From contig NC_047077.1 in NCBI RefSeq assembly GCF_902459465.1, positions 13,764,001 to 13,828,000 of the forward strand: a stretch of 64,000 nucleotides of DNA, given 5' to 3'. Positions 132 through 58,900 of the stretch are shown in pieces (position 1 is the stretch's first letter; each line of letters begins with the position of its first letter). The notes beneath the pieces are model-generated. The model worked only from the letters and a program-made list of their open reading frames with translations, did no database searches and was not told the origin of the DNA. The DNA comes from Asterias rubens (Eukaryota). A program made the translations under genes and the position numbers.

Positions 132-485
132 TTAAAGACACTGGACACTATTGGTAATTGTCAAAAAACAGTCTTCTCCACTATTAAACATACAATAACA
201 AACCTGTGAAAATTTGAGCTCAATTGGTCATCGAAGTTGCGAGATATGAATGAAATAAAAAACACCCTTGTCACACGAAGTTGTGTGCTTTCAGATGCTT
301 GATTTCGAGACCTCAAAAATCAAAATTCGTGGAAAATTACCTCTGTCTCGAAAACTACGTCACTTCAGAGGGAGTCGTTTCTAACAATGGTTTATACTAT
401 CAACCTCTCCCCATTACTCGTTAACAAGTGACGTTTTATGCTGATCATTTTTTGAGTAATTACCAATAGTGTCCACTGCCTTTAA
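132..485 (+). mobile_element. Kolobok/T2-type MITE (main family), full length
   Basis: TTAA-AGACACTGGACACTATTGGTAATT...AATTACCAATAGTGTCCACTGCCT-TTAA. The body is shared with more than 10 other copies. Strand is relative orientation only. Confidence 0.88.
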
Positions 486-19800: not shown

Positions 19801-20088
19801 TGAAATCATTGGGTATATAAGACCAGTGTCTGTATTTATCCTTGCAAATAAAGACAAGGACCAATGTCTGGGCGTGTCAATATGCAACCGAGTGATTGAG
19901 GGGCAACACGAACAACAAGTCGTCATAAAAGACTTGGGACTTTTAAATTAAAAAAAAGTTCCCTTCAAAACAAACAAAATGACTCAAACCCGCTTTTGCT
20001 ATCTTCCGCGGCTTATTCGTACCCTTTGTTTAGTTTGTGTACACTTAGTGACTGAAGTCCTACTCATTTCTGCTGAGCAGACAGTTGT

Positions 20089-20457
20089 TTAAGGCAGTGG
20101 ACACTATTGGTAATTACTCAAAATAATTATCAGCATAAAACCTCATTTGGTAACGAGTAATGGGGAGCTGTTGATAGTATAAAACATTGTGAGAAACGGC
20201 TCCCTCTGAAGTGACGTAGTTTTCGAGAAAGAATTTTTTTTCCACGAATTTGATTTCGAGAGCTCAAGTTTAGAACTTGAGCTCTCGAAATCAAGCATCT
20301 AAAGCACACAACTTCTTGTGACAATGGTGTGTTTTTCTTTCATAGTTATCTCGCAATTCCGACAACCAATTGAACTCAAATTTTCACAGGTTTGTTATTT
20401 TATGCATATGTTGAGATGCACCAAGTGAGAAGACTGGTCTTTAATAATTACCAATAG
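20089..20457 (-). mobile_element. Kolobok/T2-type MITE, right TIR truncated
   Basis: TTAAGGCAGTGGACACTATTGGTAATTACTCAAAA start, full body, ends ...AATTACCAATAG. Confidence 0.85.
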
Positions 20458-21084
20458 CTTCGCTAGTTTGTTGTGCTAAGGCAGGTCTATGAAATTAGAC
20501 CCTGGTTTTAACATCTGGAACGACGATTGTAAACACCAACGTTTATTACAGGTCATGTTTACACACATCCAGGGAGGACTTTGCCGCCGTGACACTGGCG
20601 GGGTTACGCCGGGGGCTCAGTCAGTGTACACGAACAGCGTTTGACGCTAACAATACAGATTGTATTCTAAATAGGGCAACGGTATAAAGCTGTCGGCAGG
20701 TCGACTCGGCCCCACTGCAAGTTCACTTTGTTGTTCACCACAGGGATCATTTAGGATTAATTTGAAGTGAGATTTCAACATATACTTTGAAATAATACCT
20801 GTTGGGATTGTGTGGAAGAGGAAACTGGCTCACTACGAGTGACGAGCATCTATTGGCATCCAGTCTTTTTGGAGGAAGTTGAGGTTTTTGAGAGTTGTCT
20901 CGACGGTTCGCACAGTAAACTTCTTCAGGTCAGACCTCTCTGGTAATATTCTCTGCACATTTTTTATTTAATAAGAAAACATGTGTGTATTCAACCACCC
21001 TGCCGTTGTTGTATATAAATTATAGTTGTAATTAGTTTTTTTTATGCAGTTTGTCTGGTTTCACTCCCAACATCTGTTGGACTG

Positions 21085-21469
21085 TTAAAAGCAGTGGACA
21101 CTATTGGTAATTTCTCAAAATAATTGTTATCATAAAAATGTAGTTGGTAACAAGCAATGGGGAGCTTTTGATAGTTTAAGGCGTTGTGAGAAACGGCTCA
21201 CTCTGAAGTATTGTAGTTTTCGAGAAATCAGTAATTTTCCACATAACTATTTGAAATTGACTTCGATACCCCAGAATTAGATTTTTAGGTCCCGAAATCA
21301 AGCATCTAAAAGCACACAACTTCGTGTGACAAGGTTTTTTTTCCCCATAATTATCTCGCAACTTCGACGACCAATTGAGTTAAAATTTTAACATGTTTGT
21401 TATTTTGTGCATATGATGAGATACGAGAGACTGGTCTTGACATTTACCAAAGGTGTTCAATGTCTTTAA
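21085..21469 (-). mobile_element. Kolobok/T2-type MITE
   Basis: TTAA at both ends, degenerate TIRs, family body. Confidence 0.85.
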
Positions 21470-36997: not shown

Positions 36998-39900
36998 GCA
37001 GCAGCAGCAACACAACAAAACAAACGCGACAACAACAAACGCAAAGCTGATTTGGAATGTTACAACCATTAGGGCTGTGAATTTCACATCCTAAACATTA
37101 TGCATGGGTCATCACCCTCTCTTTATTTCCTGACTCGCACAAAAACGGATAACGCAACAACATTTTCACAAGTTTGTTGTTATTTCATGTATATACTTGA
37201 TCACATAAAACCTGAACACTTTCTGCAAACATTTTGTCAGCTCTAGCAATCTTGAAAAAATCAATTGAATGACATGTATACAAAAACACACTCGCCCAAC
37301 AAGCTCATTCATTCAACGATGTGGAAAGGTGTTAGAAAGGCCATTATTACATGGTTGTATTCACTCTGTTGAGCAATCATGTATGTATTAAATATGCACC
37401 AAGGTAGATCAATATCCATATTATATTTTAATACTGTATGCTTATCCCGTCGCCAAACGTGCCGGCAGATCGATTTTATTATTGAAATTTCTGGTCGTGT
37501 GTTTACAGTTTATCCATAATACTGGCCTTGCTCGTGAGGTTCGTGTTTAAGTAGTTCAAATCAACGCTTTGTCATTGAAGGCTCAGTTCTATTGCCCGGT
37601 GTTGACGCTCTATATTAATACCAAAAATATGCAGTTCGTGACAAAACGTACATTGGTGTGTATATTATTTGCTCATCAAATAGATGACCAAAAGAGATTT
37701 CTGTTATACACTAAAAGGAACATTACAGAATTGTTTTTTGCTAAGAAAACAGTTGCTGGCAGTGTAAGCACTTTGTGTAATCCACCATATACATAAACTG
37801 ACAAACCTGTAGAAGCTTGAGATCGATCGGCCATCTGTGTCACATGAGAATAGTGAAAAACCGATTACAAATTTTGCATTACATCGATGTCAAAATAAAA
37901 ATGAAGAAAACGAGCACTGAACGAAAAACTCCAAACGCGAAGTTAGATTATTTTTTTTCTCATCAAACATGACATTTCAGACAGAAATATTCCAAGGGAT
38001 GTTTTCAACTATCATCATCATTAGTTAGACCGTGGAAGTTTTATGTTAATCTGTGAGCTTCACGATTTTTGTTTCTTACCAATTCTGTAACATTCCTTTA
38101 AACTATGAGGTACCTCAACATGTTCAATTATCAATTGAATATCCATATTGAGGTTTCGTGTAGTGTTCGTTCTCTTGCAAAGCTATCATATAATATTATT
38201 TTGCTACGAGTATTTTAGTGCGTTGTAAGCAAGTTGGGCATGATGACGTTAGGTAATGTGGATGTTTCCAACTGCATTTGCATAGCCAGTGGCAGATGTG
38301 GTGGACACAATATTGTACTATTAGTAGATTATCCACCACATCCTAAAAGGGCTAATAATTGGTGGGGGAAAAACCTCTGTTCATTTATAAATAGTCCATT
38401 CCCGTGAAATATTTTAATTATATTATTTTTTTGTTTATGTCACCAGCTACGGGTATCGTAATAGAATGCATGTAGTTTGGTTATCCCCTCTTTAATCATG
38501 GCAATAACTACTGACTTGAAATGTAGTACTAGGCCTATAGGCCTACATCAGATTTCGAAAGCATTTTGAGAATCATTTCCTCTTTGAAGTAATATGGAAA
38601 ATAGAAAAAGTATATCAGCTTTTATAGCCGAGATCTGAGAAGCGTTACTGACAGTAACGGCTCTCAGATTATGTATTCTAATTACGGGTTATTCTTCCTT
38701 CATGGATATAATCGCTCCGAAATTTTAGCATATCTCAAAAACGCGACAGTGCCTTTTGAAATGATTTTTTTCACAGGTTAGTTTCATTGTATATTTCTAT
38801 ACAGGAATAATAATCAAACGGTTCAAGAACCACATGGATTGTATACTTTCTCTTTAGTAAGCCTCAAAAAGCCAGCGTTCTAAGATGTTTTTTTCACAGG
38901 TTTGTTTCATTGTATATTTTTATATTTATACAGGAATAAAACAATCAAGTGGTTTAAAAAACCACATGGGTTATGTACGTTCTGTTTGGTAAGCGTCTAA
39001 AAGCTGTTCAAAATAGAAACAGCAAAACTGTACAGTGATTAAAAAAAATGCACTGGTTGCACTCGGGTCAAACCTACAACAATGGATTATAAAATACGTT
39101 TGTATGTAAATACTTGTTTAAAAGGAAGGTACACGTTTGGTAATTACTCAAAAAAATATTAACTTAAAAACTGACTTGGTAAAGAGCATTGGAGAGCTGT
39201 CGATAGTATACAACATTGTGAGAAACGGCTCCCTCTGAAGTAGCATAGATTTTGAAATAGAGGTAATTTCTCACTAAAATAATAAAAGACTTCTAGCTAG
39301 AAGTCTTTTTTTCCTATGTGAAAGCACACAAATTCGTCCAATAGGGGTGTTTTTTCTTTCATCATTTTCTCCAAACTCAGATGACCAATTGAGCTCAAAT
39401 TTTTACAGGTTTGTTATTTTATGCATAATGTTGAGATACACCAAGAGAGGAGACTGGTCTTTGACAATTACTAATAGCGTACCTTCCCTTTAATGCTCTC
39501 TTCGACTTTACACTTCATAACTTACGCTCTAGCTATTCCCATTAAGGGAACGCTGAAGTGGATGTAACAAAGCAAATCGTGTTTTTGCGGCATTATAAAT
39601 GGAATCCAAGTGTGTTAAGGGTCAGTTTTGTGTACCTACACGTTGCATGCTGTGTGTTTTTGTACAGGTTTGTCATCTTAGGTCTTGCGTATTTGAGTAT
39701 TTGTGTCGGCATGCAGTGTTCACAGTTGAAACCAGTTTGGGGCTCAATGTGTGGAATGGTGCACTTCCCCCACTGTGTGTCTCCATTGTGTATACCTAGA
39801 ATCTTGGGAATTCCTTTGAGGAATTTAGGGAGAATACTTCTGTACACAAGGAAAACAGTCAGTGTTGACCTTTCTCTATGGTTAATTTATGAGAATATTT

Positions 39901-42900
39901 GGGGATACACACTGCACCATATCGGGCATTTTATTTTATGCAAGTTGAGCTCAAAAATTTAAACAAGCTCAAATGATTGACAAACTTCACTTGGAATGGG
40001 CCTTCATTTTCAAAACATTCCCAGCTACAGTCTGTAGTAACAGAGGGATTTTAAAGAAACTTGTGTCAAGTGAACAACTGCTTTGCTGTGCTATGACCCT
40101 ATTCGGACATTCATTTAAATTGCTAACTTTCAATTGTTGTCCCTATATTTATGGGACGCACCATCAGAAAATGACCTCTCACCTTTCAAGTATCTTGGGA
40201 ATCCATATAAGGGCATGACGACGAGTATTCCCAAACAGGCTGGCATGACGAGACCCAGCCACCACGCACCGATCCATAGTGGATGATCTGCATTTATTCC
40301 TCTGCAAAGAGCAGCAAAAAACATTACACATTAACGCAGTTGCACTTTGCCAAATTGTATTTGCGTTTTGCTACAAGTTTATCCGTCTCGTCCAGCAATT
40401 CCACCCAGTGACAATCTCAATGGTTGATTGACACAATCTCCAAAATGGTGGGATCGTATAAATTGTTTAAAACGTTGTCCAAAAATGTTAAGTACATTTT
40501 TGTGAAGTGCCTTATAGAACATTATTACGAGGTGAAATTTGGACGAGTGAAATGGAATTCAGATTTAAAAAAAGTTATTATATTCTGCGACAATGCTTAT
40601 ACCAAATGCATTCATTTTTTCTTTATATAATTCACTAATATTCCACACATTGTTTGTTGAACATTTTTCACAAAAAAATCACAGTCCAGATACGGAAACT
40701 CGTTCACCCCGGTCTCTAAAACGTTGTGTAAACCCCCAATGTGACAATACCTTGAAAGTCGATTATACAAACGGGCGGGGAATGAATATTTTGGAAACGA
40801 CGCTACGAACCGTCCTATAATTATCCATATGGGACTCCTATATTAAATTTTGGAGCGTGGATGACACGTGGCGCGATTTCACCAATCTTTAATATGACAT
40901 ACATCATGTTCGTGTTCTTTAGGAATTGTGGTGATTCAGAACAGAACAAGTGGTTTGAAAACTCGACATTTCGATCAAGCTGCTCTCCTCTGACCGTCTT
41001 CATGAGAATGTATCCATCACTAATGTTTCCCACCGTGCAAGTTTAAAAAAAAAAAACATTTAAAATGAAATGTTCAGAAGCTAAATCGAAACAGACGACA
41101 AGAGGATTTACTTACTCGTTAGGCTCCTTGGGGAAGTCTGTATATATTCCTAGGAACAGACCACCGACAAGATATCCAATTGCTGGACCCAGAGTAGTAA
41201 CTGCCTGGAAAACACCTGTTACATGTACCAACAATAATAGAGATTTGTACAACTATTATCTTCTATGAAAATCTGTAATGTTCATTTTGTTCATATTCAT
41301 GAAAAATTGATTATGACGGGAGTTCGTCAAAATAATTTAAAAATGCAATAGAGTTGAAAAACATGGACAAGAAAAGTTTTATTTCTTTTCCGTTATGGTT
41401 TTCCGGATATCTGAATATTATTAGTATATTGGATTATTCAAATCTGCTTGTAGCAGTGGACACTATTGGTAATTGTCAAAGACTAGCCTTTACAGCTGGT
41501 GTATCTCAACATAAGCATTAAATAACAAACCTGTGAAAATTTCAGCTCAATCGGTCATCGAACTTGCGAGATAATAATGAAAAAAAAAACACCCTAGTCA
41601 CACGAAGTTGTGTGCGTTTAGATGGTTGATTTCGAGACCTCAAGTTCTACATCTGAGGTCTCGAAATTAAATTCGTGGAAAATAACTTCTTTCTCGAAAA
41701 CTATGTCACTTCAGAGGGAGCCGTCTCTCACAATGTGTTATGCCATCAACCTCGTTACCAAGAAAGGTTACTCGTTACCAAGAAAGGTTTTATGCTAACA
41801 AATATTTTGAGTAATTACCAATAGTGTCCACTGCCTTTAACAGGCTGAACAAGCAGATGAACAAGGAGCAAAAGTCCAAACATCAAGATAAAACTAGTAG
41901 ATAGCATTAAATATACACAATAACAGCGGATTATACCCAAAAGAGAAAAAATCATCCAAGAGTCAAGGCAATGTCAAAATCACCGACATTTGTTTGTAGG
42001 TGATCTTCCCAAACATTGAGTTTAAGTCATATGATTTCAAATTGTGCAAATCAAGAAATTGAGATACAGTAACTAGACTACAATATTCCAGTCATTGTAA
42101 AATCAGCGTTTAGCTTTGGTAGGATTCGAACCCACAACCTTGTGATTGCAAGTCCTGCAGTCTAATCACTAAAGTGACCATGTTTACTCACCTACATAAA
42201 GTGACACGCTCACCGGATTGACGTTTTCATCAAGATACGTCACACCAAGTGTGTACAAAGGTGAGGCACCTATTCCATGCAGCGCCTGCGCCGCCACAAA
42301 CATCCAGAAATAGTTACTTAAACTAGTATCCCCCGCATTGCAACCCGGAACCTCGGCCCGGTTCGGATCGCACGTGTCGACATCAGACGGCATGACGTCA
42401 TAGTCTGGTGTCAGGAAGTGCGGCAGCATGAATATGATGGAGCCTAGAACAAAGATCAGGGAACCAGTTCCGAGCCACTTGGGCTTGTGGCTTTTCTCAC
42501 CAATGTACGTGACGAAGACGATGATGACCATGACGGAGAAGTCGTAACAGCTGCTGATGGATCCGCTCTGGACGCTCGGCAGGGAGAACCGTTTCTCCAG
42601 CGTGGACGTGATGACGTAGATGAAACCGTTCACCGTCATGCCCTGCACGAGGGCGAACCAACTCAGAAACACCAGGTACCCCTTGGGGTTGTTCAGGAAC
42701 TGGAGACACCCTGGCCGGAACCCGAGCCACCCGTACCTCACGTAGTCATCCGGATCGTCCGAAGATGAACTCATTCTCCGGGTTTTTCCTCCGTTGAGAT
42801 TCCGGATCTCCACTTCGCCCCGCCCATGGGTGGTATCCCCATTCTGATAGTTTGATGTCTCCATCTCGTTGTTGTAACTTGGGTTGTTAAAACCGTTTTC

Positions 42901-45442: not shown

Positions 45443-45771
45443 TATAGGAGAGTTTGCGGTAACACCATGTAATAACAATCTCTAAATGAGTTGGGGTGGT
45501 TCTGAAAAGAACCGTTGGATTAACTCGACGTTTCGATCAGTATGCTCTGATCAAAAGAACCGTTGGATTAACTCGACGTTTCGATCAGTATGCTCTGATC
45601 AAGACGATCAGAGCATACTGATCGAAACGTTGAGTTAATTCAACGGTTCTTTTCAGAAGACGATCAGAGCATACTGATCGAAACGTCGAGTTAATCCAAC
45701 GGTTCTTTTCAGAACCACCACAACTCATTTAGAGATTGTTATTACATGGTGTTACCGCAAACTCTCCTATA
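45443..45771. repeat. 329-bp near-perfect palindrome of Penelope-type terminal-repeat sequence with an internal 48-bp duplication on each arm
   Basis: TATAGGAGAGTTTGCGGTAACACC...GGTGTTACCGCAAACTCTCCTATA. 48-bp blocks at 45505-45552 and 45553-45600, inverted at 45606-45653 and 45662-45709. Each block carries GATCAG-AGCATA-CTGATC-GAAAC. Confidence 0.85.
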
Positions 45772-46424: not shown

Positions 46425-47771
46425 TTAAAGACAGTGTACACTATTGGTATTTGTCAAAAACCAGTCTTCTCTCTTGGTGTATCTCAACAAAATGCATAAA
46501 ATAACAAACCTGTGAAAATTTGAGCTCGATCGGTCGCACAGTGGGCCAGAATTGAATCAAAGTGTGCCAAATTATATCTCAACATATTTTTGGTGAAAAT
46601 TATATTTAAACATATTTATGATGGAAAGTTGGTTGTAAGGGGTTTTCCTTCTGATACGTAGAATTTGATGGTCATGGTTTTAAAGGTCTATGACGTCATC
46701 ATAGTCCTGAATCGTGATTGGTCGGCAAGAGTTAATAACTACTAATATCGTTTTGTTCATTTTTTCCCCTAGGCATATCAAAGAAACAGTTTGTGAACAA
46801 TTAATGTTTTGCGATGCAAAGTGTGTTTTCATAAGGGTTTCTAAAAGCGTTACTCATAAAGGGTGGTCTTTCTTTGATGCTAAACAGAGAAATATGACCG
46901 CTGACACACGCACTGTCGTTACAGGTGGTTGAGTCAAAACAGGGTATACAACTTCAAAATTGAATAATTTCCAAAGTCGCAAAATGTCGCAACCAAATTT
47001 GGTTTTAGACTGTTCCTGAAGGTTCAGGCTACTGAAAAAAGTTAGAATTAAAGCGGCAATCGGCGGCATTTTATATTTCCTATGTCTCTGATTGAAATAA
47101 ATGAAAACTAGGAGGCATTTTATGGGATTTATCAGATTTTTTCAAACAGTAAACAGAAATTAAACTGATTATTAATTTAATTTTCATGAAATATGGACTA
47201 TAAACAACCATCGACACGGTTTTCATGGCATTATCTTTTATGAGCGTTCAGGGTCGCAAGTTAAAATACCCATTAAGTTCAACGGTTTTGCCGCACTTTG
47301 TTACGATTTTTTGTCTAAATAAAGTCATAACCCTAATTTTAAAGAGTTTTGTTTCATTAATTCTTTCTTTTAACATACCCCTGGACTATTAAGAACAATA
47401 ACAAAATGGAAGTACTGATTTTTGAAACAATCACCAGTTGCCTATTTTTTTTTGGCGCAGTTTGACCTTGACCTGGCCCACTGTGGGTCGTCGGAGTTGC
47501 AAGATAACTATGAAAGAAAAAAAACACCCTTGTCACACGAAGTTGTGTGCGTGTATATAGATGCTTGATTTCGAGACCTCAAGTTCTAAACTTGAGGTCT
47601 CGAAATCAAATTCGTGGAAAATTACTCCCTTCTCCAAAACTAGGTCACTTCAGTGGGAGCTGTTTCTCACAATGTTTTATACCATCAACCTCTCCCCATT
47701 ACTCGTTACAAAGTAAGGTTTTATGCCAATAATTATTTTGAGTAATTACCAATAGTGTCCACTGCCTTTAA
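46425..47771 (+). mobile_element. Kolobok/T2-type MITE split by the Transib-like insertion
   Basis: The 5' part (46425-46536) and 3' part (47486-47771) rejoin into a complete element flanked by TTAA. Confidence 0.9.
46537..47485. mobile_element. Non-autonomous Transib/RAG-like DNA transposon (949 bp) with CACAGTG termini and 5-bp TSD, nested in a Kolobok-type MITE
   Basis: Perfect 13-bp TIR CACAGTGGGCCAG at 46537-46549 and CTGGCCCACTGTG at 47473-47485. GGTCG is duplicated at 46532-46536 and 47486-47490. The host MITE sequence resumes seamlessly on both sides. No long ORF inside. Confidence 0.85.
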
Positions 47772-50973: not shown

Positions 50974-51338
50974 TTAAAGGCAGAGGACACTATTGGTAAT
51001 TGCTCAAAATAATTATTAGCATAAAACCTTACTTGGTAACGATTAATTTGGAGAGGTTGATGGTATAAAACGCTGTGAGAAACGGCTCCCTCTGAAGTGA
51101 CATACTTTTCGAGAGAGAAGTAATTTTTCACGAATTTGATTTCGAGACCTCAGATTCAGAATTTGAGGTCTCGAAATCAACCATCTGAAAGCACACAACT
51201 TCGTAGGACAAGGGTATTTTTTCTTTCATTATTATCTCGCAACTTCGACGACCGATTGAGCTCATTCACAGGTTTGTTATTTCATGCATAATGATGAGAT
51301 ACAGCAAGTGAGTAGACTGGTCTTTGACAATTCCAAAT
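50974..51338 (-). mobile_element. Kolobok/T2-type MITE, right end truncated
   Basis: TTAA-AGGCAGAGGACACTATTGGTAAT followed by a near-consensus body. Confidence 0.87.
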
Positions 51339-51490
51339 GAACTGGGGAGTGTGCTAAATCCTGACAAGACTTTGTGGGATAGAATCGCCGATGAATCTTT
51401 TGACAAAGAAGTTTGTTATAACCGATTATCACCGATAACCGCTATAGAGCCAGAAATGAAGAAAACAAAATTACACGTACACGCGGCCGG

Positions 51491-52946: not shown

Positions 52947-55900
52947 ATGTCAGAACAAGGGACTGAGGATCGTGAGCCTCACGGTGAGGTGAGTGTTATC
53001 ACTTGATTTCTAGTTGAAATTGAACTGTACCCTTTATTATTTAATAGTGAAATATTCCTGTGTATTTTACCACTCAACATCATACAATACATGCTCAATC
53101 AAAACAATATTATTGTCAGCTTTCACTTTTCTTTTTTTAGTTTTTTTAATGTGCACAAAACATGGCATGTTCAGTCTTAATATTTGCTATGCACATTTTT
53201 CTTTTTTGGTTTTACATTGTACTGATTATCAGAGTCAGACACAGGGCTTAATACATTAGGTAGGAAAGGGTTTCCTGTATCCATAAATACTGCCACCACT
53301 TGTCTCATCTTTACCTAAAAGAAGGGAAAATCTGTAGTCTACATAATACAGTGTAAAGAATAAGTTAGAGGAATGCTTCGCTTTAGTTGGATGCTTTTCC
53401 GTGCGGCGCCACCACTTTTTCACTAATTTTTACAAAAAGGGATTTCATTGAGGTAAACTAGATATCGAATGAAAAAGTGGTGGTCATAACATAATGAAAA
53501 AGTGCTGTCATTTTTCCTTCATTTGTTAGTATTGTTTTTATAATACCATTTTTCATAATGTTATTGTTTGGTATGATGTGGCCCAAGTTTTTACATTCAC
53601 AGGTATAATCAAATGCAGTCTGCATACATTTAATATAATTTCAAAATGGCACACACTCACATACCTTTTTTTTCGTTTGTTTTTTTACAAAGGAAACTTC
53701 TTTGAAGAAAATGTAATAATAATTGAAGTGAATCATTGGAACAACGCATAATCACAGGTCACCACAACAATTGCTGCAATTGACATGGGTTAATCATTTC
53801 AGAACATGTTTGGTGCTGTATGTTTTGGGGGTATTTTTTAGCTATATTAGTTTAAAGCCATTATACACTTTCGGTACCGGAAAAAAAAAAAAAAGTTCAC
53901 ACATTTACAAATAATTTACAGGGTTTACAGAAGGTAATGGTGAAAGACTTCTCTTGAAATATTGTTCCATGAAATGCTTTACTTTTCGAGAAAACATTAA
54001 AACAATACCAATTCTCGATAGCGAGAATTACGGATTTTTTTTTTTTAAACACATGTCATGACATGGCGAAACTTGCGGAAACAAGAGTGGCTTTTCCCGT
54101 TATTTTCTCCCGACTCCAATGACCGATTGAGCCTAAATTTTCACAGGTTTGTTGTTTTATATATAAGTTGTGATACACGAAGTGTGGGACTTGGACAATA
54201 CTGTTTACCAAAAGTGTATTTAATGGCTTTAAGAAATACTTAATTTTTTGCTTACACTTTACAATATTTCTAACAGGAGCAGCAACCCGCATCTGGAGAA
54301 CAAGATGAAAAACCTGCCACAGAAGAAAACAATGAAGACAAGCAAAAACAACAAGAAGAGGCTGTCGATGGTGAAAACACAGACAAGAAAAATGAATCAA
54401 ATGAAGGTAGAGAGAGGGGGACGGAGAGGGGACAGCCAAAGGGGACCAAAGTAGGAACAGGTATTAGCCATGGAAGAACATTATACAGTCATCGTATTGT
54501 CACCTGGCTTCTATCATATTCCATCGCATAAACCATTTCTCCATTTGCCATCATTGGCTTAATTTCATATTGCTGTTAGTTAAGCAGAAACTACTGAGTA
54601 GACAAACTTCTTTGCTAAGCAAAAGTCAAGTTGGGCACCAGCCACAACCATGCAAACTTAAAGTAATTTTGGCTGGTTACCTGTTTCTGCTAAGCAAAGC
54701 TATACTGTGCTCCTGTTTCCTGTCAAACTGATACTGTGCAACGACCCCTTTGAAAATTGTATGAAAGTTCAATTGCAAGGTTTTTAAGACAAACAAACAA
54801 ATTGTAAATTTTGTTGTTTATTTTGTCCTGGGTCTTCAAATAGCTGCATCCTATAACCCTCCATCCTCATAGGGGGCTTCACTTTTCAGTGGTTTGGGGT
54901 CACTGGTTTGTTTTGGGAAGTTTTTTCTTACTATACATGTAGTGTGAGACGGCGTACACAATTCAAATTGACTGCATGACTTGTTTGGTTGTGGGGTTAT
55001 TTGCCCAGGCAGTGCCTGAATAACTAGTCGTAGTCTAGCGGTCAAAGATGCAGATAGCTCTGGCATTAGAGACAGTGTTGAGTTAAAGACACTGGACACT
55101 ATTGGTAATTGTCAAAGACTAGCCTTCACAGTTGATGTATCTCAACACATGCATAAAATAACAAACCTGTGAAAATTTTAGCTCAATCGGTCATCGAACT
55201 TGCAACATAATAATGAAAGAAAAAAACACCCTTGCCAAGCAAAGTTGTGTGCGTTTAGTTGGTTGATTTCGAGACCTCAAGTTCTAAATCTGAGGTCTCG
55301 AAATCAAATTCGTGGAAAATTACGTCTTTCTCTAAAACTATGGCACTTCAGAGGGAGCCGTTTCTCGCAATGTTTTATACCATCGACCTCTCCCCATTAC
55401 TCGTCACCAAGTAAGGTTTTATGCCAATAATTATTTTGAGTAATTACCAATAGTGTCCGTTGCCTTTAAGGATGAACTGTCCCTCTAAAAAATGAAATCA
55501 GAATAAATTGTAATTACTCAAGGGCTGACACAAACCAAACATCACAGACAAATAACGAAATAACCCACAGTTCAAAGTCGACTCCTCGTTCAGTTCCACC
55601 TGACGCTTATCATCAATTTCCACCAATCATCCATTTATTCCACTGACATTCAAAGAGTGGTACATTCTATTGTCACTAACAATGACTGCATGCTCAATTT
55701 ATGTTCCTGCGTATAATGCCTTGTTTGATTAAATCACATTGCAAACAAGGAGGGTCACCAGTTTCATGCTTAGTTTCCAACAAGTGGTGCATTCTTCCAT
55801 ACTGTACTTTCAACCCACTCTCAGTCATTCATCATTTTTAGTTTTAAAGTGGCTATCATGTTGCAGTTCTCGGTGGAAATAAATTGTAATAACAATACGG

Positions 55901-58900
55901 TTATTAAAGGCAGTGGACACTATTGGTAATTGTCAAAGAATAGCCTTCACAGTTGGTGTATCTCAACATATGCATAAAATAACCAACCTGTGAAAATTTT
56001 AGCTCAATCGGTCATCAAAATTGCGAGATAATAATGAAAGAAGAAAACACCCTTGTCACACGAAGTTGTGTGCGTTCATGGTTGATTTCGAGACCTCAAA
56101 TTCTAAACTTGAGGTCTCGAAATCAAATTCGTGGAAAACTACATCTTTCTCGAAAACAATGGCACTTCAGAGGGAGCTGTTTCTCACAATGTTTTATACC
56201 AACAACCTCTCCCCATTACTCGTCACCAAGAAAGGTTTTATGATGATAATTACCAATAGTGTCCACTGCCTTTAAATGGACACTAGTGGTAATTACTCAA
56301 AATAAATGACAGTGTAAACACCTACTTGGTAAATAGAGCAAGGGAGAGCTGTTGATAGTACAAAACATTGTGAGAAACAGCTCCCTCTGAAGAATCATAG
56401 TTTTTTAAAAATAATTTCTCACTCAAATATAAATCAGGCTTTTTTTAGGCATCTGCACAAATTTGTGCAACAAGGGTGTTTTTTCTGTCATTATTCTCTT
56501 GCAACTTTGATGACCAAACATGAGTCCCAATTATAAACGAAAAACATACAAACAAATTCTCACACCGATTGCGACACCAATGCACAAAATACATGTAACT
56601 GCAAAACTGTTTGATTATAAAAGTTGATGTTATTATTACAATTCATTTATTTGTAATCTTTGTTTTAGTGAACTCAACAGCAGAAGAATCGAAACATCAA
56701 AAGCAGTTTGTTGCGGAATTCAACCGGTTAAAGGACAGCCTGGAAAAGGAAGCTACAAAAATTATCAAACCGGAATTGTAAGTACAGTTTGGGGCTCTAA
56801 TTCAACATTGTGGGTTTATTTATTTGTAGGGTGTATGTGGTCCCTATAGGGTACGTTTGATTAGTTTCCCTGTGTCGACCCTGCGGTACTCACTCGGGTG
56901 ACCCCTGACACGAGCTAGTCGAAGGATCACATCTCGTGGTGACGTCAAGCACCTGGGGCCAGCCCAAAGTGACCCATTCCGGGTGAGCCCCTAGAATGAT
57001 GTCAAAGCTATTCTAACGTACCGGGGCAGACCGGGGTCAACCCAGGGAAGCTAATCGAACGCACTCCTTATTAGTCAGTAAAATCAGTCAATAAATCAAT
57101 ACTTGTTGAGAAGGCACTGCATAATTTTTCCCTTGACTCTCAGATTTGATTTTGTTTTGTTTTTATTAGACACCTTATCACAGGGCCCTCCCCAGGATTG
57201 TTCAAACTGTAGGACATTTTGGACCCAACTGTTTAGATGTTTGGTCGAAGCACACTCAGTTGACAAACTCATTCACCAATGCTCCTGAATGTCTTTTTGA
57301 TACGTTCATTGTGTATACACACTAAAGTATCAAACCATGAGACAACCCCCCCCCCTAGCTTTAGTAGACCTGTTTTCATTCAATAAATAACTAACATTTA
57401 ATTTAAACATGTTTTTTACTTGACAGCCAACCACACACACCATATATTCACACCAGTCTAGCACCATATTACAACACGTACACAGTACAATACCTTTTGG
57501 ATCTGGTAAGTGTACAGATTTTTTTTTTTTAATAATTAGCTTGGAAGTTAGGGTTACAACAAACAACTTTTTTAAAGCAAATCACATGCCCTTCAAGCGA
57601 TTTGCCTTAACAAAAATGTGTGTTTATTTTTCAATCCCTTGTATTGTTCAGAATTGACTTTTGTAAGACCGTGACCTAATCAAGTGACTTCGACGGGGGT
57701 CCTTATATCTTACGCAAAAATTAAATTTCAAGAACAGTCCAATTTTATAAACTTGGTTTTTATAAAATTTGAGTCAAAGGTGCAAAGTTTTGATCTGAGT
57801 AGGGCACAATTTCTTCTAAAAAAATTGAGGAGAGCAGTACTTCTTGTATTTTTCAAAATGAAAATACAGGTAAGGCCTGTATTTATGCTTTGTTTTTGAA
57901 AGGGCAAGGGCATCGTGGACATTTTCTTCTTGAATGGCACCCTATGAGGAAATTTTAACTTTCTACTGGGAGCATTTCATGGGCACCAAGGCAATGAGGG
58001 GCATCGAGGCAATCGCATTCGTTGCCTCCAATGCCTTTGTAAAGTATCAGGCCTGCATGTAACAAAATTATAAAGAACAACTCTTTTGCACTTTAAGCAA
58101 TTCCCCGCTCTCTATAAAGTAATTTTGGTAATTTTTCTGCGTTTTTGAATTGCACACAATTATTTTTTGAATGATTCTTATTTTTCAGCCGCCTCATGTC
58201 CGACACGGATACATCACTCGAAAAACAGCCATTGGTCTTGTAGATCCAGAAGTCTCACATACCATGGATGTGTAAGTAGCTAAAGAATTGTACTTGAAAT
58301 CTTGGCTTGATTTAGGAAATCACTAATAAGAGTCATCTTAAAGGCAGGGTATACTTTTGGTATTTTGTTTGGTGTGCCCAAAATAAACAACCTGTGTAAA
58401 TTTAGGCTTAGTCATCAAAGTTGCAAGAAAATCGTGCAAGTAAAAAACACTCTCTCTTGTGAAAAATTACATCTTTCTCTAAAAGTACATTACAGAACCA
58501 CAGACTAATTGTTGTTGATATTCTATAATGATCGTTTTGAAATTCACTTTAAAAAGATTGTGACTTACAATTTTCATGAGGACTTATTTATTTATTGGAA
58601 AATGAATGCACCACAAAACTGGAGCCCCTCCTTAAGTTACGATTAGTTTAACGTCACACACTTGGCTTTAGCACTATTCAAATTCACTAGCCAAAGATGA
58701 ATCTAATTTAATCTGTAGTAGGGTTAAAGAAAAGTGTTTATTTCGTGAAAATGAAATATCTTGTGAAAATGAGTAAATTAATTGTATTTGTCTCTTTTGA
58801 TTCATTGTACAGGAGTCTTGATTCCGTCCCAGATTCAGTTGAAATACCAGTAACCTCAATGACAGGAGATCTCTCGTAAGTAACCATCTCAAATGGAGAT

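What the first reader, a model, noticed from the sequence alone, without database searches (positions are those of the whole stretch)
46532..47490. Transib/RAG-like element with RSS-heptamer termini, bipartite TIRs and a perfect 5-bp TSD
Seen in sequence: a 949-bp insert splits a Kolobok MITE, begins CACAGTG and ends CACTGTG, and is flanked by duplicated GGTCG. The TIR is bipartite: 13 bp perfect, 7 bp unmatched, then 15 bp at 13/15 (TCAAA.TG.GCCAAA). At both ends CCAAA starts exactly 23 nt after the heptamer; the right end reads CCAAAAAAA, a 6/9 match to the RSS nonamer ACAAAAACC. Established: CACAGTG is the V(D)J RSS heptamer, and CAC termini with 5-bp TSDs characterise Transib and RAG-like (ProtoRAG) transposons, the relatives of RAG1. 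Inference: this is a relatively young non-autonomous member, so a Transib or RAG1L/RAG2L transposase was active in this lineage after the host MITE spread.
Basis: partly seen in the sequence, partly recalled or inferred. Interest (0 to 1): 0.8.

Follow-up and report, generated by a model that had tools for sequence, protein, structure and literature searches.

The report
Gene-less Transib transposon copy in starfish
This is a young 949-bp gene-less copy of a Transib jumping gene, the family from which the antibody recombinase RAG1 and its signal sequences arose; its signal-like ends are real but typical of the family, so it is a well-documented ordinary element.

Summary
Window 46537-47485 is a 949-bp insert with 13-bp perfect termini (CACAGTGGGCCAG), a second matching box, and a GGTCG duplication. 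Eight uninterrupted copies of the host MITE carry that pentamer only once.

It belongs to a family of at least 19 end-to-end copies; 14 have perfect 5-bp duplications. The window copy shows 4 substitutions in 937 sites against the family majority.

It is a canonical Transib, not a RAG-like (RAG1L/RAG2L) element:
- A 3,380-bp element on contig 3 has the same termini. Its ORF matches the solved Helicoverpa Transib transposase at E=2e-97.
- A second MITE family (~1,070 bp) is a deletion derivative of that element.
- The window family is closer to a related Transib known only from metagenome contigs (TIR 36/37; 67% over ~600 bp). No such parent is in this assembly.
- Nine ends from five lineages share the 13-mer, a variable 7 bp, then a conserved box ending in CCAAAA 23 nt after the heptamer.

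The genome's RAG1L/RAG2L transposon (contig 12) has different, A-rich TIRs.

The scan has already followed up a sister copy (s1-175468) and judged it ordinary. I class this as a new member of a known kind, of low to moderate interest.

The parts
46425..46531 (.). Left part of the host MITE (TTAA at 46425-46428, then 5'-AG terminus); Kolobok-type by signature only
   Evidence: Inverted repeat I1 with 47744-47771. It aligns with 8 uninterrupted paralogues. TTAA plus RR..YY termini match the Kolobok definition in PMC9587614.
46532..46536 (.). Left copy of the 5-bp target-site duplication, GGTCG
   Evidence: The pentamer is single in the paralogous empty sites.
46537..47485 (-). 949-bp non-autonomous Transib element (family 1). 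The minus strand is given because its right end matches the 5' (transposase-upstream) end of the related autonomous element
   Evidence: At least 50 genomic matches, 19 of them end to end. No ORF of 90 aa or more. Its termini are shared with autonomous Transibs.
46537..46549 (+). Left terminal 13-mer CACAGTGGGCCAG (exact RSS-type heptamer plus 6 bp)
   Evidence: I13. Identical in 8 of 9 ends from 5 lineages; the ninth has one mismatch.
46557..46571 (+). Left distal TIR box TCAAAGTGTGCCAAA. This copy has lost one A of the family's CCAAAA tract
46904..47485 (-). Part homologous to the 5' subterminal ~590 bp of a related autonomous Transib (L060, from a metagenome)
   Evidence: blastn: element 368-949 against L060 element 590-1, 67% identity, E=1.4e-45. 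TIR 36/37. A similar match to L062.
47451..47465 (-). Right distal TIR box (reads TCAAACTGCGCCAAA on the minus strand), followed by a private 5-bp A/T-tract expansion at about 47445-47449
47473..47485 (-). Right terminal 13-mer, the exact complement of the left one
   Evidence: I13
47486..47490 (.). Right copy of the target-site duplication, GGTCG
47491..47771 (.). Right part of the host MITE (ends CT-3' then TTAA at 47768-47771)
   Evidence: (2,770 first-look candidates in the genome)

Best explanation
The insert is a non-autonomous (MITE-like) member of the canonical Transib superfamily. It encodes nothing, and it moved by cut-and-paste using a Transib transposase supplied from elsewhere.

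Inferred mechanism, from what is established for Helicoverpa Transib and RAG: the enzyme binds each end through two contacts, the terminal 13-mer that starts with the CAC cleavage signal and a distal box at positions 21-36. It nicks at the CAC border, makes a hairpin on the flanking DNA, and inserts the freed element with a 5-bp stagger into a GC-rich, palindromic CRNYG target.

Here the target was GGTCG inside an older TTAA-flanked MITE.

The enzyme source is one of two. It may be the single resident autonomous Transib on contig 3, whose ends share both boxes and whose own deletion derivatives were moving over the same period. Or it may be a closer relative of the metagenome type that is missing from this assembly.

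Shown: the structure, the family, the duplications, the target bias, the relative age and the homology to autonomous Transibs. Inferred: the chemistry, the two-contact recognition, and which enzyme acted.
For: - Termini, boxes and duplication are at the stated coordinates.
- Paralogous empty sites are present.
- Family 1 has 19 end-to-end copies: 14 with perfect 5-bp duplications and 3 with 4/5. Family 2 has 14/15 perfect.
- The 13-mer occurs 93 times against 0/1 for the control.
- Targets follow CRNYG and are 72% G+C, in a window that is mostly 34-41% G+C.
- The contig 3 element (3,380 bp, duplication TGGCG) has the same termini. Its 606-aa ORF matches the Helicoverpa Transib transposase (6pqn_A) at E=2.3e-97 over residues 8-468 of 497. 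The WGFDG, TMVDQK and SEEAQEARNK motifs are kept.
- Family 2 is 96-97.5% identical to that element's two ends.
- The window element's right 580 bp is 67% identical to the 5' region of the autonomous Transib L060, with TIR 36/37.
- Nine ends from five lineages have majority fractions of 0.99 (positions 1-13), 0.56 (14-20), 0.94 (21-36) and 0.50 (37-60).
- Ages: the window copy has K2P 0.004 to the family majority, and 11 copies are at 0.017 or less. Family 2 is at 0.004-0.026.
- Published Transib traits match: 5-bp duplications, CAC heptamer, about 23 bp, an A-rich block, GC-rich targets, and non-autonomous families that include a sea urchin one (PMC1131882). The nick-hairpin chemistry is as cited in PMC4840297.
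Against: - No autonomous parent of this particular family exists in the assembly. The only Transib transposase locus is on contig 3, and it shares with the window family only about 35 bp of TIR (80-88%) plus a weak 75-bp stretch.
- Relative to a colinear 713-aa homologue, the contig 3 reading frame switches inside a run of six G. The resident copy may therefore be defective, or the assembly may be wrong there.
- No presence/absence polymorphism could be shown.
- The 'spacer' is not free. Positions 21-30 are conserved, so the heptamer-23-nonamer reading is only an analogy.
- Nothing here tests binding or cleavage.
Confidence: 0.92

Rival explanations
1. It is a non-autonomous RAG-like (ProtoRAG/RAGL) element moved by the RAG1L/RAG2L pair encoded in this genome.
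For: - 5-bp duplications and CAC termini are shared by RAGL and Transib.
- The genome carries a RAGL-B element on contig 12 with TIRs and a 5-bp duplication. Its RAG1L core ORF is open (E=3e-145 to amphioxus RAG1L, 6b40_A) and it has a convergent Kelch+PHD ORF.
- Its heptamer, CACAGCG, differs from CACAGTG at one position.
Against: - RAGL TIRs are defined by CAC plus an A-rich stretch at positions 8-10 (PMC7204232). The contig 12 element has AAAAATC there, while the MITE has GGCCAG.
- Beyond position 7 the two TIRs are unrelated.
- The MITE's TIR and about 580 bp of its body are homologous to canonical Transibs that carry only a transposase.
- No blastn similarity to the three RAG1-like loci was better than chance.
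Confidence: 0.03
2. It belongs to another superfamily with CAC-type ends (CACTA/EnSpm, Chapaev, Mirage).
For: The CAC start alone is shared. Earlier scan notes report Chapaev-like transposases elsewhere in this genome (unchecked).
Against: - Here 28 of 34 family-1 and family-2 copies examined show perfect 5-bp duplications and the rest are near-perfect or degraded.
- The autonomous relatives encode Transib transposase.
Confidence: 0.01
3. The family is a dead relic. Its own parent, a Transib of the metagenome type, has been lost, and the contig 3 enzyme cannot move it.
For: - No parent is in the assembly.
- The nearest autonomous relatives lie in other organisms: their flanks do not match this genome.
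- The contig 3 copy has a frame switch.
- The window copy carries private indels in both A-tracts.
Against: - Both conserved TIR boxes are shared with the contig 3 element.
- The two MITE families have the same target motif and overlapping divergence ranges, as expected if one enzyme pool moved both.
- One assembly of one individual cannot show that a low-copy element is absent from the species.
Confidence: 0.35

Closest known systems
Non-autonomous Transib families (TransibN1_AG, TransibN1_DP, and TransibN1_SP of the purple sea urchin; Kapitonov & Jurka 2005, PMC1131882)
   Same: - No coding capacity.
- 5'-CAC...GTG-3' ends with an RSS-like heptamer.
- An A-rich block about 23 bp further in.
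- 5-bp duplications.
- GC-rich and partly palindromic targets. The paper reports CASTG and CAWTG for two mosquito families; here the motif is CRNYG.
   Different: - The heptamer is exactly CACAGTG (the RSS consensus), not the Transib consensus CACAATG.
- The conserved terminal block is 13 bp.
- The second conserved block covers positions 21-36, so it runs into what is a free spacer in the published 38-bp consensus.
- The host is a starfish.
- No comparison with Repbase or Dfam was possible.
Helicoverpa zea Transib (Hztransib; PDB 6pqn and related entries)
   Same: The transposase of the resident autonomous element aligns over nearly the whole solved protein at E=2.3e-97, with the three acidic motifs kept. 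It makes 5-bp duplications by cut-and-paste with a hairpin on the flank (literature).
   Different: - Relatives of the starfish enzyme are about 700 aa, with an extra N-terminal region of about 160 aa.
- Hztransib TIRs are said to have little nonamer similarity (PMC4840297).
- Activity of the starfish enzyme is untested.
RAGL/ProtoRAG (TransibSU) transposons of amphioxus, acorn worm and bat star
   Same: CAC ends, 5-bp GC-rich duplications and a RAG1-related DDE enzyme. Non-autonomous RAGL elements are known (PMC7204232).
   Different: RAGL TIRs have an A-rich stretch right after the heptamer and go with a RAG1L-RAG2L pair. The window element lacks that stretch and instead matches elements that encode a lone Transib transposase.
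V(D)J 23-RSS
   Same: An exact CACAGTG heptamer and an A-tract that begins 23 nt later at both ends.
   Different: - Both ends are of the 23 type, with no 12/23 asymmetry.
- The family 'nonamer' CCAAAATWG matches ACAAAAACC at only 5/9.
- Part of the 'spacer' is conserved.
- It is a mobile element end, not a recombination signal beside a gene segment.

Membership tests
Transib superfamily (non-autonomous member) | 5-bp target-site duplication | tested here: met
   GGTCG on both sides. The pentamer is single in 8 paralogous empty sites. 14/19 copies perfect in family 1 and 14/15 in family 2.
Transib superfamily (non-autonomous member) | Termini 5'-CAC...GTG-3' with an RSS-like heptamer | tested here: met
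   CACAGTG / CACTGTG, conserved across the family and in related autonomous elements.
Transib superfamily (non-autonomous member) | ~38-bp TIR: heptamer, ~23-bp spacer, A-rich nonamer-like block (PMC1131882) | tested here: met
   CCAAAA starts at position 31 in all 9 ends. Qualification: positions 8-13 and 21-30 are also conserved, so the spacer is only partly variable.
Transib superfamily (non-autonomous member) | Preference for GC-rich targets | tested here: met
   29 duplications are 72% G+C with consensus CRNYG. The window is mostly 34-41% G+C in 2-kb steps.
Transib superfamily (non-autonomous member) | Ends shared with an autonomous element that encodes a Transib (RAG1-core-like DDE) transposase | tested here: met
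   The contig 3 element has the same 13-mer and distal box, and its ORF hits 6pqn_A at E=2.3e-97. L060 has TIR 36/37 plus 67% identity over ~600 bp, and L064 has TIR 91%. The direct parent was not found.
Transib superfamily (non-autonomous member) | Mobilised by Transib transposase (excision and integration) | not testable with these tools
   Needs an excision or transposition assay, or allelic empty sites. The read-laying attempt was uninformative.
RAGL / ProtoRAG transposons (non-autonomous derivative) | TIR with CAC plus a conserved A-rich stretch at positions 8-10 (PMC7204232, PMC10629977) | tested here: not met
   Positions 8-10 are GGC in all copies. The resident RAGL has AAA there.
RAGL / ProtoRAG transposons (non-autonomous derivative) | Ends shared with an element carrying convergent RAG1L and RAG2L genes | tested here: not met
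   The contig 12 RAGL-B TIR, CACAGCGAAAAATC(A/C)CCCA, is unrelated after position 7. There is no blastn similarity to the three RAG1-like loci.
CACTA/EnSpm, Chapaev, Mirage | 2-4-bp target-site duplication | tested here: not met
   5 bp throughout.
Kolobok (the host MITE only) | TTAA duplication with 5'-RR...YY-3' termini (PMC9587614) | tested here: met
   TTAA|AG...CT|TTAA in the window copy and in paralogues.
Kolobok (the host MITE only) | Ends shared with an element encoding a Kolobok transposase | not tested

The most novel reading that the evidence does not exclude
The starfish holds a live or very recently live canonical Transib system: one autonomous copy and two MITE families less than about 1.5% diverged. 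In this reading the ends combine the exact RSS heptamer with a conserved distal box placed where the 23-RSS nonamer sits, and the box is read by the ~160-aa N-terminal extension that the solved 500-aa Helicoverpa enzyme lacks. The same genome also carries a complete RAGL-B transposon with its own A-rich TIRs. It would then be a natural pair for testing how heptamer-plus-distal-element recognition, the forerunner of RSS recognition, diverged between Transib and RAG-like enzymes.
Probability: 0.2. Interest if true: 0.55.

Novelty: new member of a known kind. Interest (0 to 1): 0.3.

Why it matters
Transib ends and transposase are the accepted ancestors of the V(D)J signal sequences and the RAG1 core. 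Well-resolved families outside insects are therefore useful comparative material.

This family adds three things:
- a clean deuterostome example with the exact RSS heptamer;
- a two-box end whose conservation pattern is visible across five lineages;
- evidence of recent movement.

It does not change the picture. Non-autonomous Transibs with these hallmarks, including one in a sea urchin, have been described since 2005.

The practical gains are correct repeat annotation of this genome, and a warning that the Pfam RAG1 model misses canonical Transib transposases.

Tried and rejected
1. **Pfam RAG1 (PF12940) six-frame scan.** It found only the three RAG1L loci and missed the Transib transposase. 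Pfam also gives no hit on that ORF. So this scan cannot be used to rule Transib in or out.

2. **The 6-kb element at C24:243066-249091 as a candidate autonomous copy.** It is a family-1 copy split by a nested insertion that encodes gag zinc-knuckle and aspartyl protease domains and has its own 5-bp duplication. Rejected.

3. **Empty-allele test.** All runs are short contigs that break at the repeats. The 'joints' that skip about 950-990 bp have sides under 31 letters and come from paralogous host MITEs. No verdict on polymorphism.

5. **Flanks of the metagenome Transib contigs searched in this genome.** No match. Those elements sit in other organisms and are not a polymorphic parent in this species.

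6. **Looking for the N-terminal RAG2L exons of the contig 12 element by ORF, Pfam and PDB search.** Nothing found.

7. **Majority consensuses of the two non-coding MITE families.** They were computed inside scripts only to measure divergence and were not printed.

Full report
**1. The observation**

The sequence is as described. GGTCG lies at 46532-46536 and 47486-47490. CACAGTGGGCCAG lies at 46537-46549, and its perfect complement at 47473-47485 (pair I13).

After seven unmatched bases comes a 15-bp box matching 13/15. CCAAA begins 23 nt after the heptamer at both ends.

The exact 13-mer occurs 93 times in the 417.6-Mb genome, against 0 and 1 for the reversed control.

The insert splits a TTAA-flanked MITE whose outer arms are 46425-46452 and 47744-47771 (I1). 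I removed the insert and one GGTCG. The rebuilt 393-bp host then aligns end to end with eight uninterrupted paralogues, five in the window and three in fetched loci. Each has one GGTC(G/A) or GGTTG at the site. These are paralogous empty sites, so the duplication is real.

**2. The family**

The 949 bp has at least 50 matches in its own genome. Nineteen copies could be delimited end to end. Fourteen have perfect 5-bp duplications, three have 4/5 and two are degraded.

Against the family majority, the window copy shows 4 substitutions in 937 aligned sites (K2P 0.004) plus a few indels. Eleven copies lie at 0.017 or below. The host MITE copy is 8.5% from the majority of its paralogues. The insertion is therefore much younger than its host.

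Two of the window copy's private indels hit the A-tracts: one A is lost at 46568 and five T are gained at about 47445-47449. The family reads CCAAAATAG and CCAAAATTA.

**3. Which transposase**

A six-frame scan with Pfam RAG1 found three loci, all RAG1L-type. Section 5 describes them.

Pairing the 13-mer hits revealed two further things:
- a second MITE family of about 1,060-1,085 bp, with 14 of 15 fetched copies showing perfect 5-bp duplications;
- one 3,380-bp element at C3:11901224-11904603, flanked by TGGCG.

Family 2 is an internal-deletion derivative of that element, 97.5% and 96% identical to its two ends.

The element's 606-aa ORF matches the solved Helicoverpa zea Transib transposase (6pqn_A) at E=2.3e-97. 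The match covers residues 8-468 of 497 and keeps the WGFDG, TMVDQK and SEEAQEARNK motifs. By alignment with RAG1, and from my own knowledge, these motifs hold the DDE residues.

Pfam RAG1 does not hit this ORF, so the first scan was blind to Transib.

Six-frame searches with this protein and with its closest homologue find no other transposase locus in the assembly. Published work notes that autonomous Transibs are usually single- or few-copy (PMC4411706).

A 713-aa homologue (P0001, 70% identical) is colinear with a 176-aa upstream ORF plus the main ORF. In the contig 3 copy the frame switches inside a run of six G (L043:3246-3251). This may be a real defect or a homopolymer assembly error. 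An in-frame ATG at L043:3299 still precedes everything homologous to the solved enzyme.

**4. Where the window family comes from**

The window element shares with the contig 3 element only its TIRs (about 35 bp, 80-88%) and a weak 75-bp stretch.

It is closer to the element that encodes P0001, which is known from two metagenome contigs (L060, L061). The TIR matches 36/37, and element positions 368-949 align to the first 590 bp of that 3,950-bp element at 67% (E=1.4e-45).

The flanks of those contigs do not match this genome, so they lie in other organisms.

Two more relatives carry the same ends: L064/L065 from a Tara metagenome (transposase 61% identical) and L062 from a GenBank assembly (71% identical).

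Across nine ends from five lineages, the majority fraction by position is:

| Positions | Majority fraction |
|---|---|
| 1-13 | 0.99 |
| 14-20 | 0.56 |
| 21-36 | 0.94 |
| 37-60 | 0.50 |

The two-box end is therefore a conserved feature of this Transib clade and not a quirk of one copy. Both ends of every element have the same spacing, so there is no 12/23 asymmetry.

The 29 perfect duplications give a palindromic CRNYG motif at 72% G+C. The motif is shared by both MITE families, and their divergence ranges overlap. This is what one enzyme pool moving both families would produce.

**5. Why not RAG-like**

The genome does hold a RAG-like transposon. C12:11101081-11112742 (11,662 bp) has these features:
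- ends CACAGCGAAAAATCACCCAT and CACAGCGAAAAATCCCCCAC (18/20) and a CTCAG duplication;
- a 617-aa open RAG1L core ORF, E=3e-145 to amphioxus RAG1L against about 1e-70 to mouse RAG1, ending in a Cx2Cx3GHx4C motif;
- an upstream RAG1L exon;
- a convergent Kelch+PHD ORF that matches amphioxus RAG2L.

Its TIR has the A-rich stretch after the heptamer that defines RAGL ends (PMC7204232, PMC10629977). The MITE has GGCCAG there. The two are unrelated beyond position 7, and the MITE has no similarity to any of the three RAG1L loci.

**6. Mechanism**

By homology, the element was excised and inserted by a Transib transposase acting in trans. For this enzyme family the literature establishes nicking at the CAC border, a hairpin on the flanking DNA and 5-bp staggered integration (Hencken et al. 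2012, as cited in PMC4840297; PMC1131882).

The conservation pattern suggests two protein contacts per end. Which enzyme acted is open. I put it at roughly even odds between the contig 3 copy and a lost or unsampled closer relative.

**7. Known or new**

The following all fit the published definition of Transib (PMC1131882), which already includes a sea urchin non-autonomous family:
- 5-bp duplications;
- the CAC heptamer;
- an A-rich block about 23 bp in;
- GC-rich targets;
- gene-less derivatives;
- rare autonomous copies.

I found no paper in the searchable library that describes canonical Transib in a starfish. Repbase and Dfam could not be consulted.

Earlier notes of this scan call the organism the common starfish. 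I did not test this, though it fits the assembly size. The scan has also followed up a 1,070-bp sister copy and judged it ordinary (s1-175468). I agree: this is a new member of a known kind.

**8. Limits**

- Polymorphism could not be assessed.
- No biochemical claim is tested.
- The Kolobok label for the host rests on signature only.

Noticed in passing
G000:C12:11101081-11112742 (L036:3082 to L040:9443): An apparently complete RAG-like (RAGL-B) transposon.
- 5-bp duplication CTCAG and TIRs CACAGCGAAAAATC(A/C)CCCA (18/20).
- An open 617-aa RAG1L core ORF (E=3e-145 to amphioxus RAG1L) with a Cx2Cx3GHx4C tail, plus an upstream exon.
- A convergent Kelch+PHD RAG2L ORF.
- The exact TIR 19-mer occurs only at these two ends plus one solo end at C21:10998980.

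A 2023 paper (PMC10629977) states that no intact RAGL with TIRs was known in echinoderms; fossil ones are known in the bat star (PMC4411706). The N-terminal RAG2L exons were not found. This deserves its own follow-up.
   Followed up: partly
G000:C8:17069577-17070847 (L041) and C8:17166325-17167343 (L042): Two further RAG1L-like loci. The first shares 4.3 kb at 92-95% with the RAG1L side of the contig 12 element but lacks its TIRs and RAG2L. The second is a pseudogene with several stops.
   Followed up: partly
G000:C3:11901224-11904603 (L043:2001-5380): The only autonomous canonical Transib in the assembly (3,380 bp, duplication TGGCG). Compared with a colinear 713-aa homologue, its reading frame switches inside a run of six G at L043:3246-3251. 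This is either a real defect or a homopolymer assembly error. An earlier scan note about a 'reader gene upstream of a Transib-like transposase' (s1-150153) may refer to this locus. If so, the upstream ORF is the N-terminal part of the transposase and not a separate gene.
   Followed up: partly
G000:C24:243066-249091 (L039:1067-7092): A family-1 Transib MITE copy (duplication CACTG) split at about position 76-80 by a ~5.1-kb nested element. The nested element encodes gag zinc-knuckle and aspartyl protease domains and has its own 5-bp duplication; it is probably an LTR retrotransposon.
   Followed up: partly
window 45696-45742 (+): An Rfam histone 3' stem-loop hit (35.6 bits, just above the gathering score) with no histone ORF nearby. 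The surrounding 45486-45728 holds repeated copies of the same stem-loop-like sequence on both strands.
   Followed up: no
window 132-485, 20088-20473, 21085-21469, 39121-39493, 41447-41840, 50974-51356, 55083-55469, 55904-56275 and fragments: The TTAA-flanked host MITE (~390 bp, with an internal perfect 21-bp hairpin at 47565-47609 in this copy) is very abundant. The window holds at least 8 near-full copies, and the genome has 2,770 first-look candidates.
   Followed up: partly
L064 (ENA ERZ28654519, Tara metagenome scaffold), L060/L061 (ENA ERZ17095334, ERZ27290468), L062 (GCA_014845345.1): Autonomous Transibs with 61-71% identical transposases and the identical terminal 13-mer and distal box occur in marine metagenome assemblies and in another GenBank genome. 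The clade is therefore widespread in marine organisms, and its ends are far more conserved than its proteins.
   Followed up: partly
method: Pfam PF12940 (RAG1) does not detect this Transib transposase, nor its 70% and 64% identical homologues. It barely detects another relative, P0015 (43% identical to the query; 32.7 bits). Scans that rely on it will miss canonical Transibs.
   Followed up: yes
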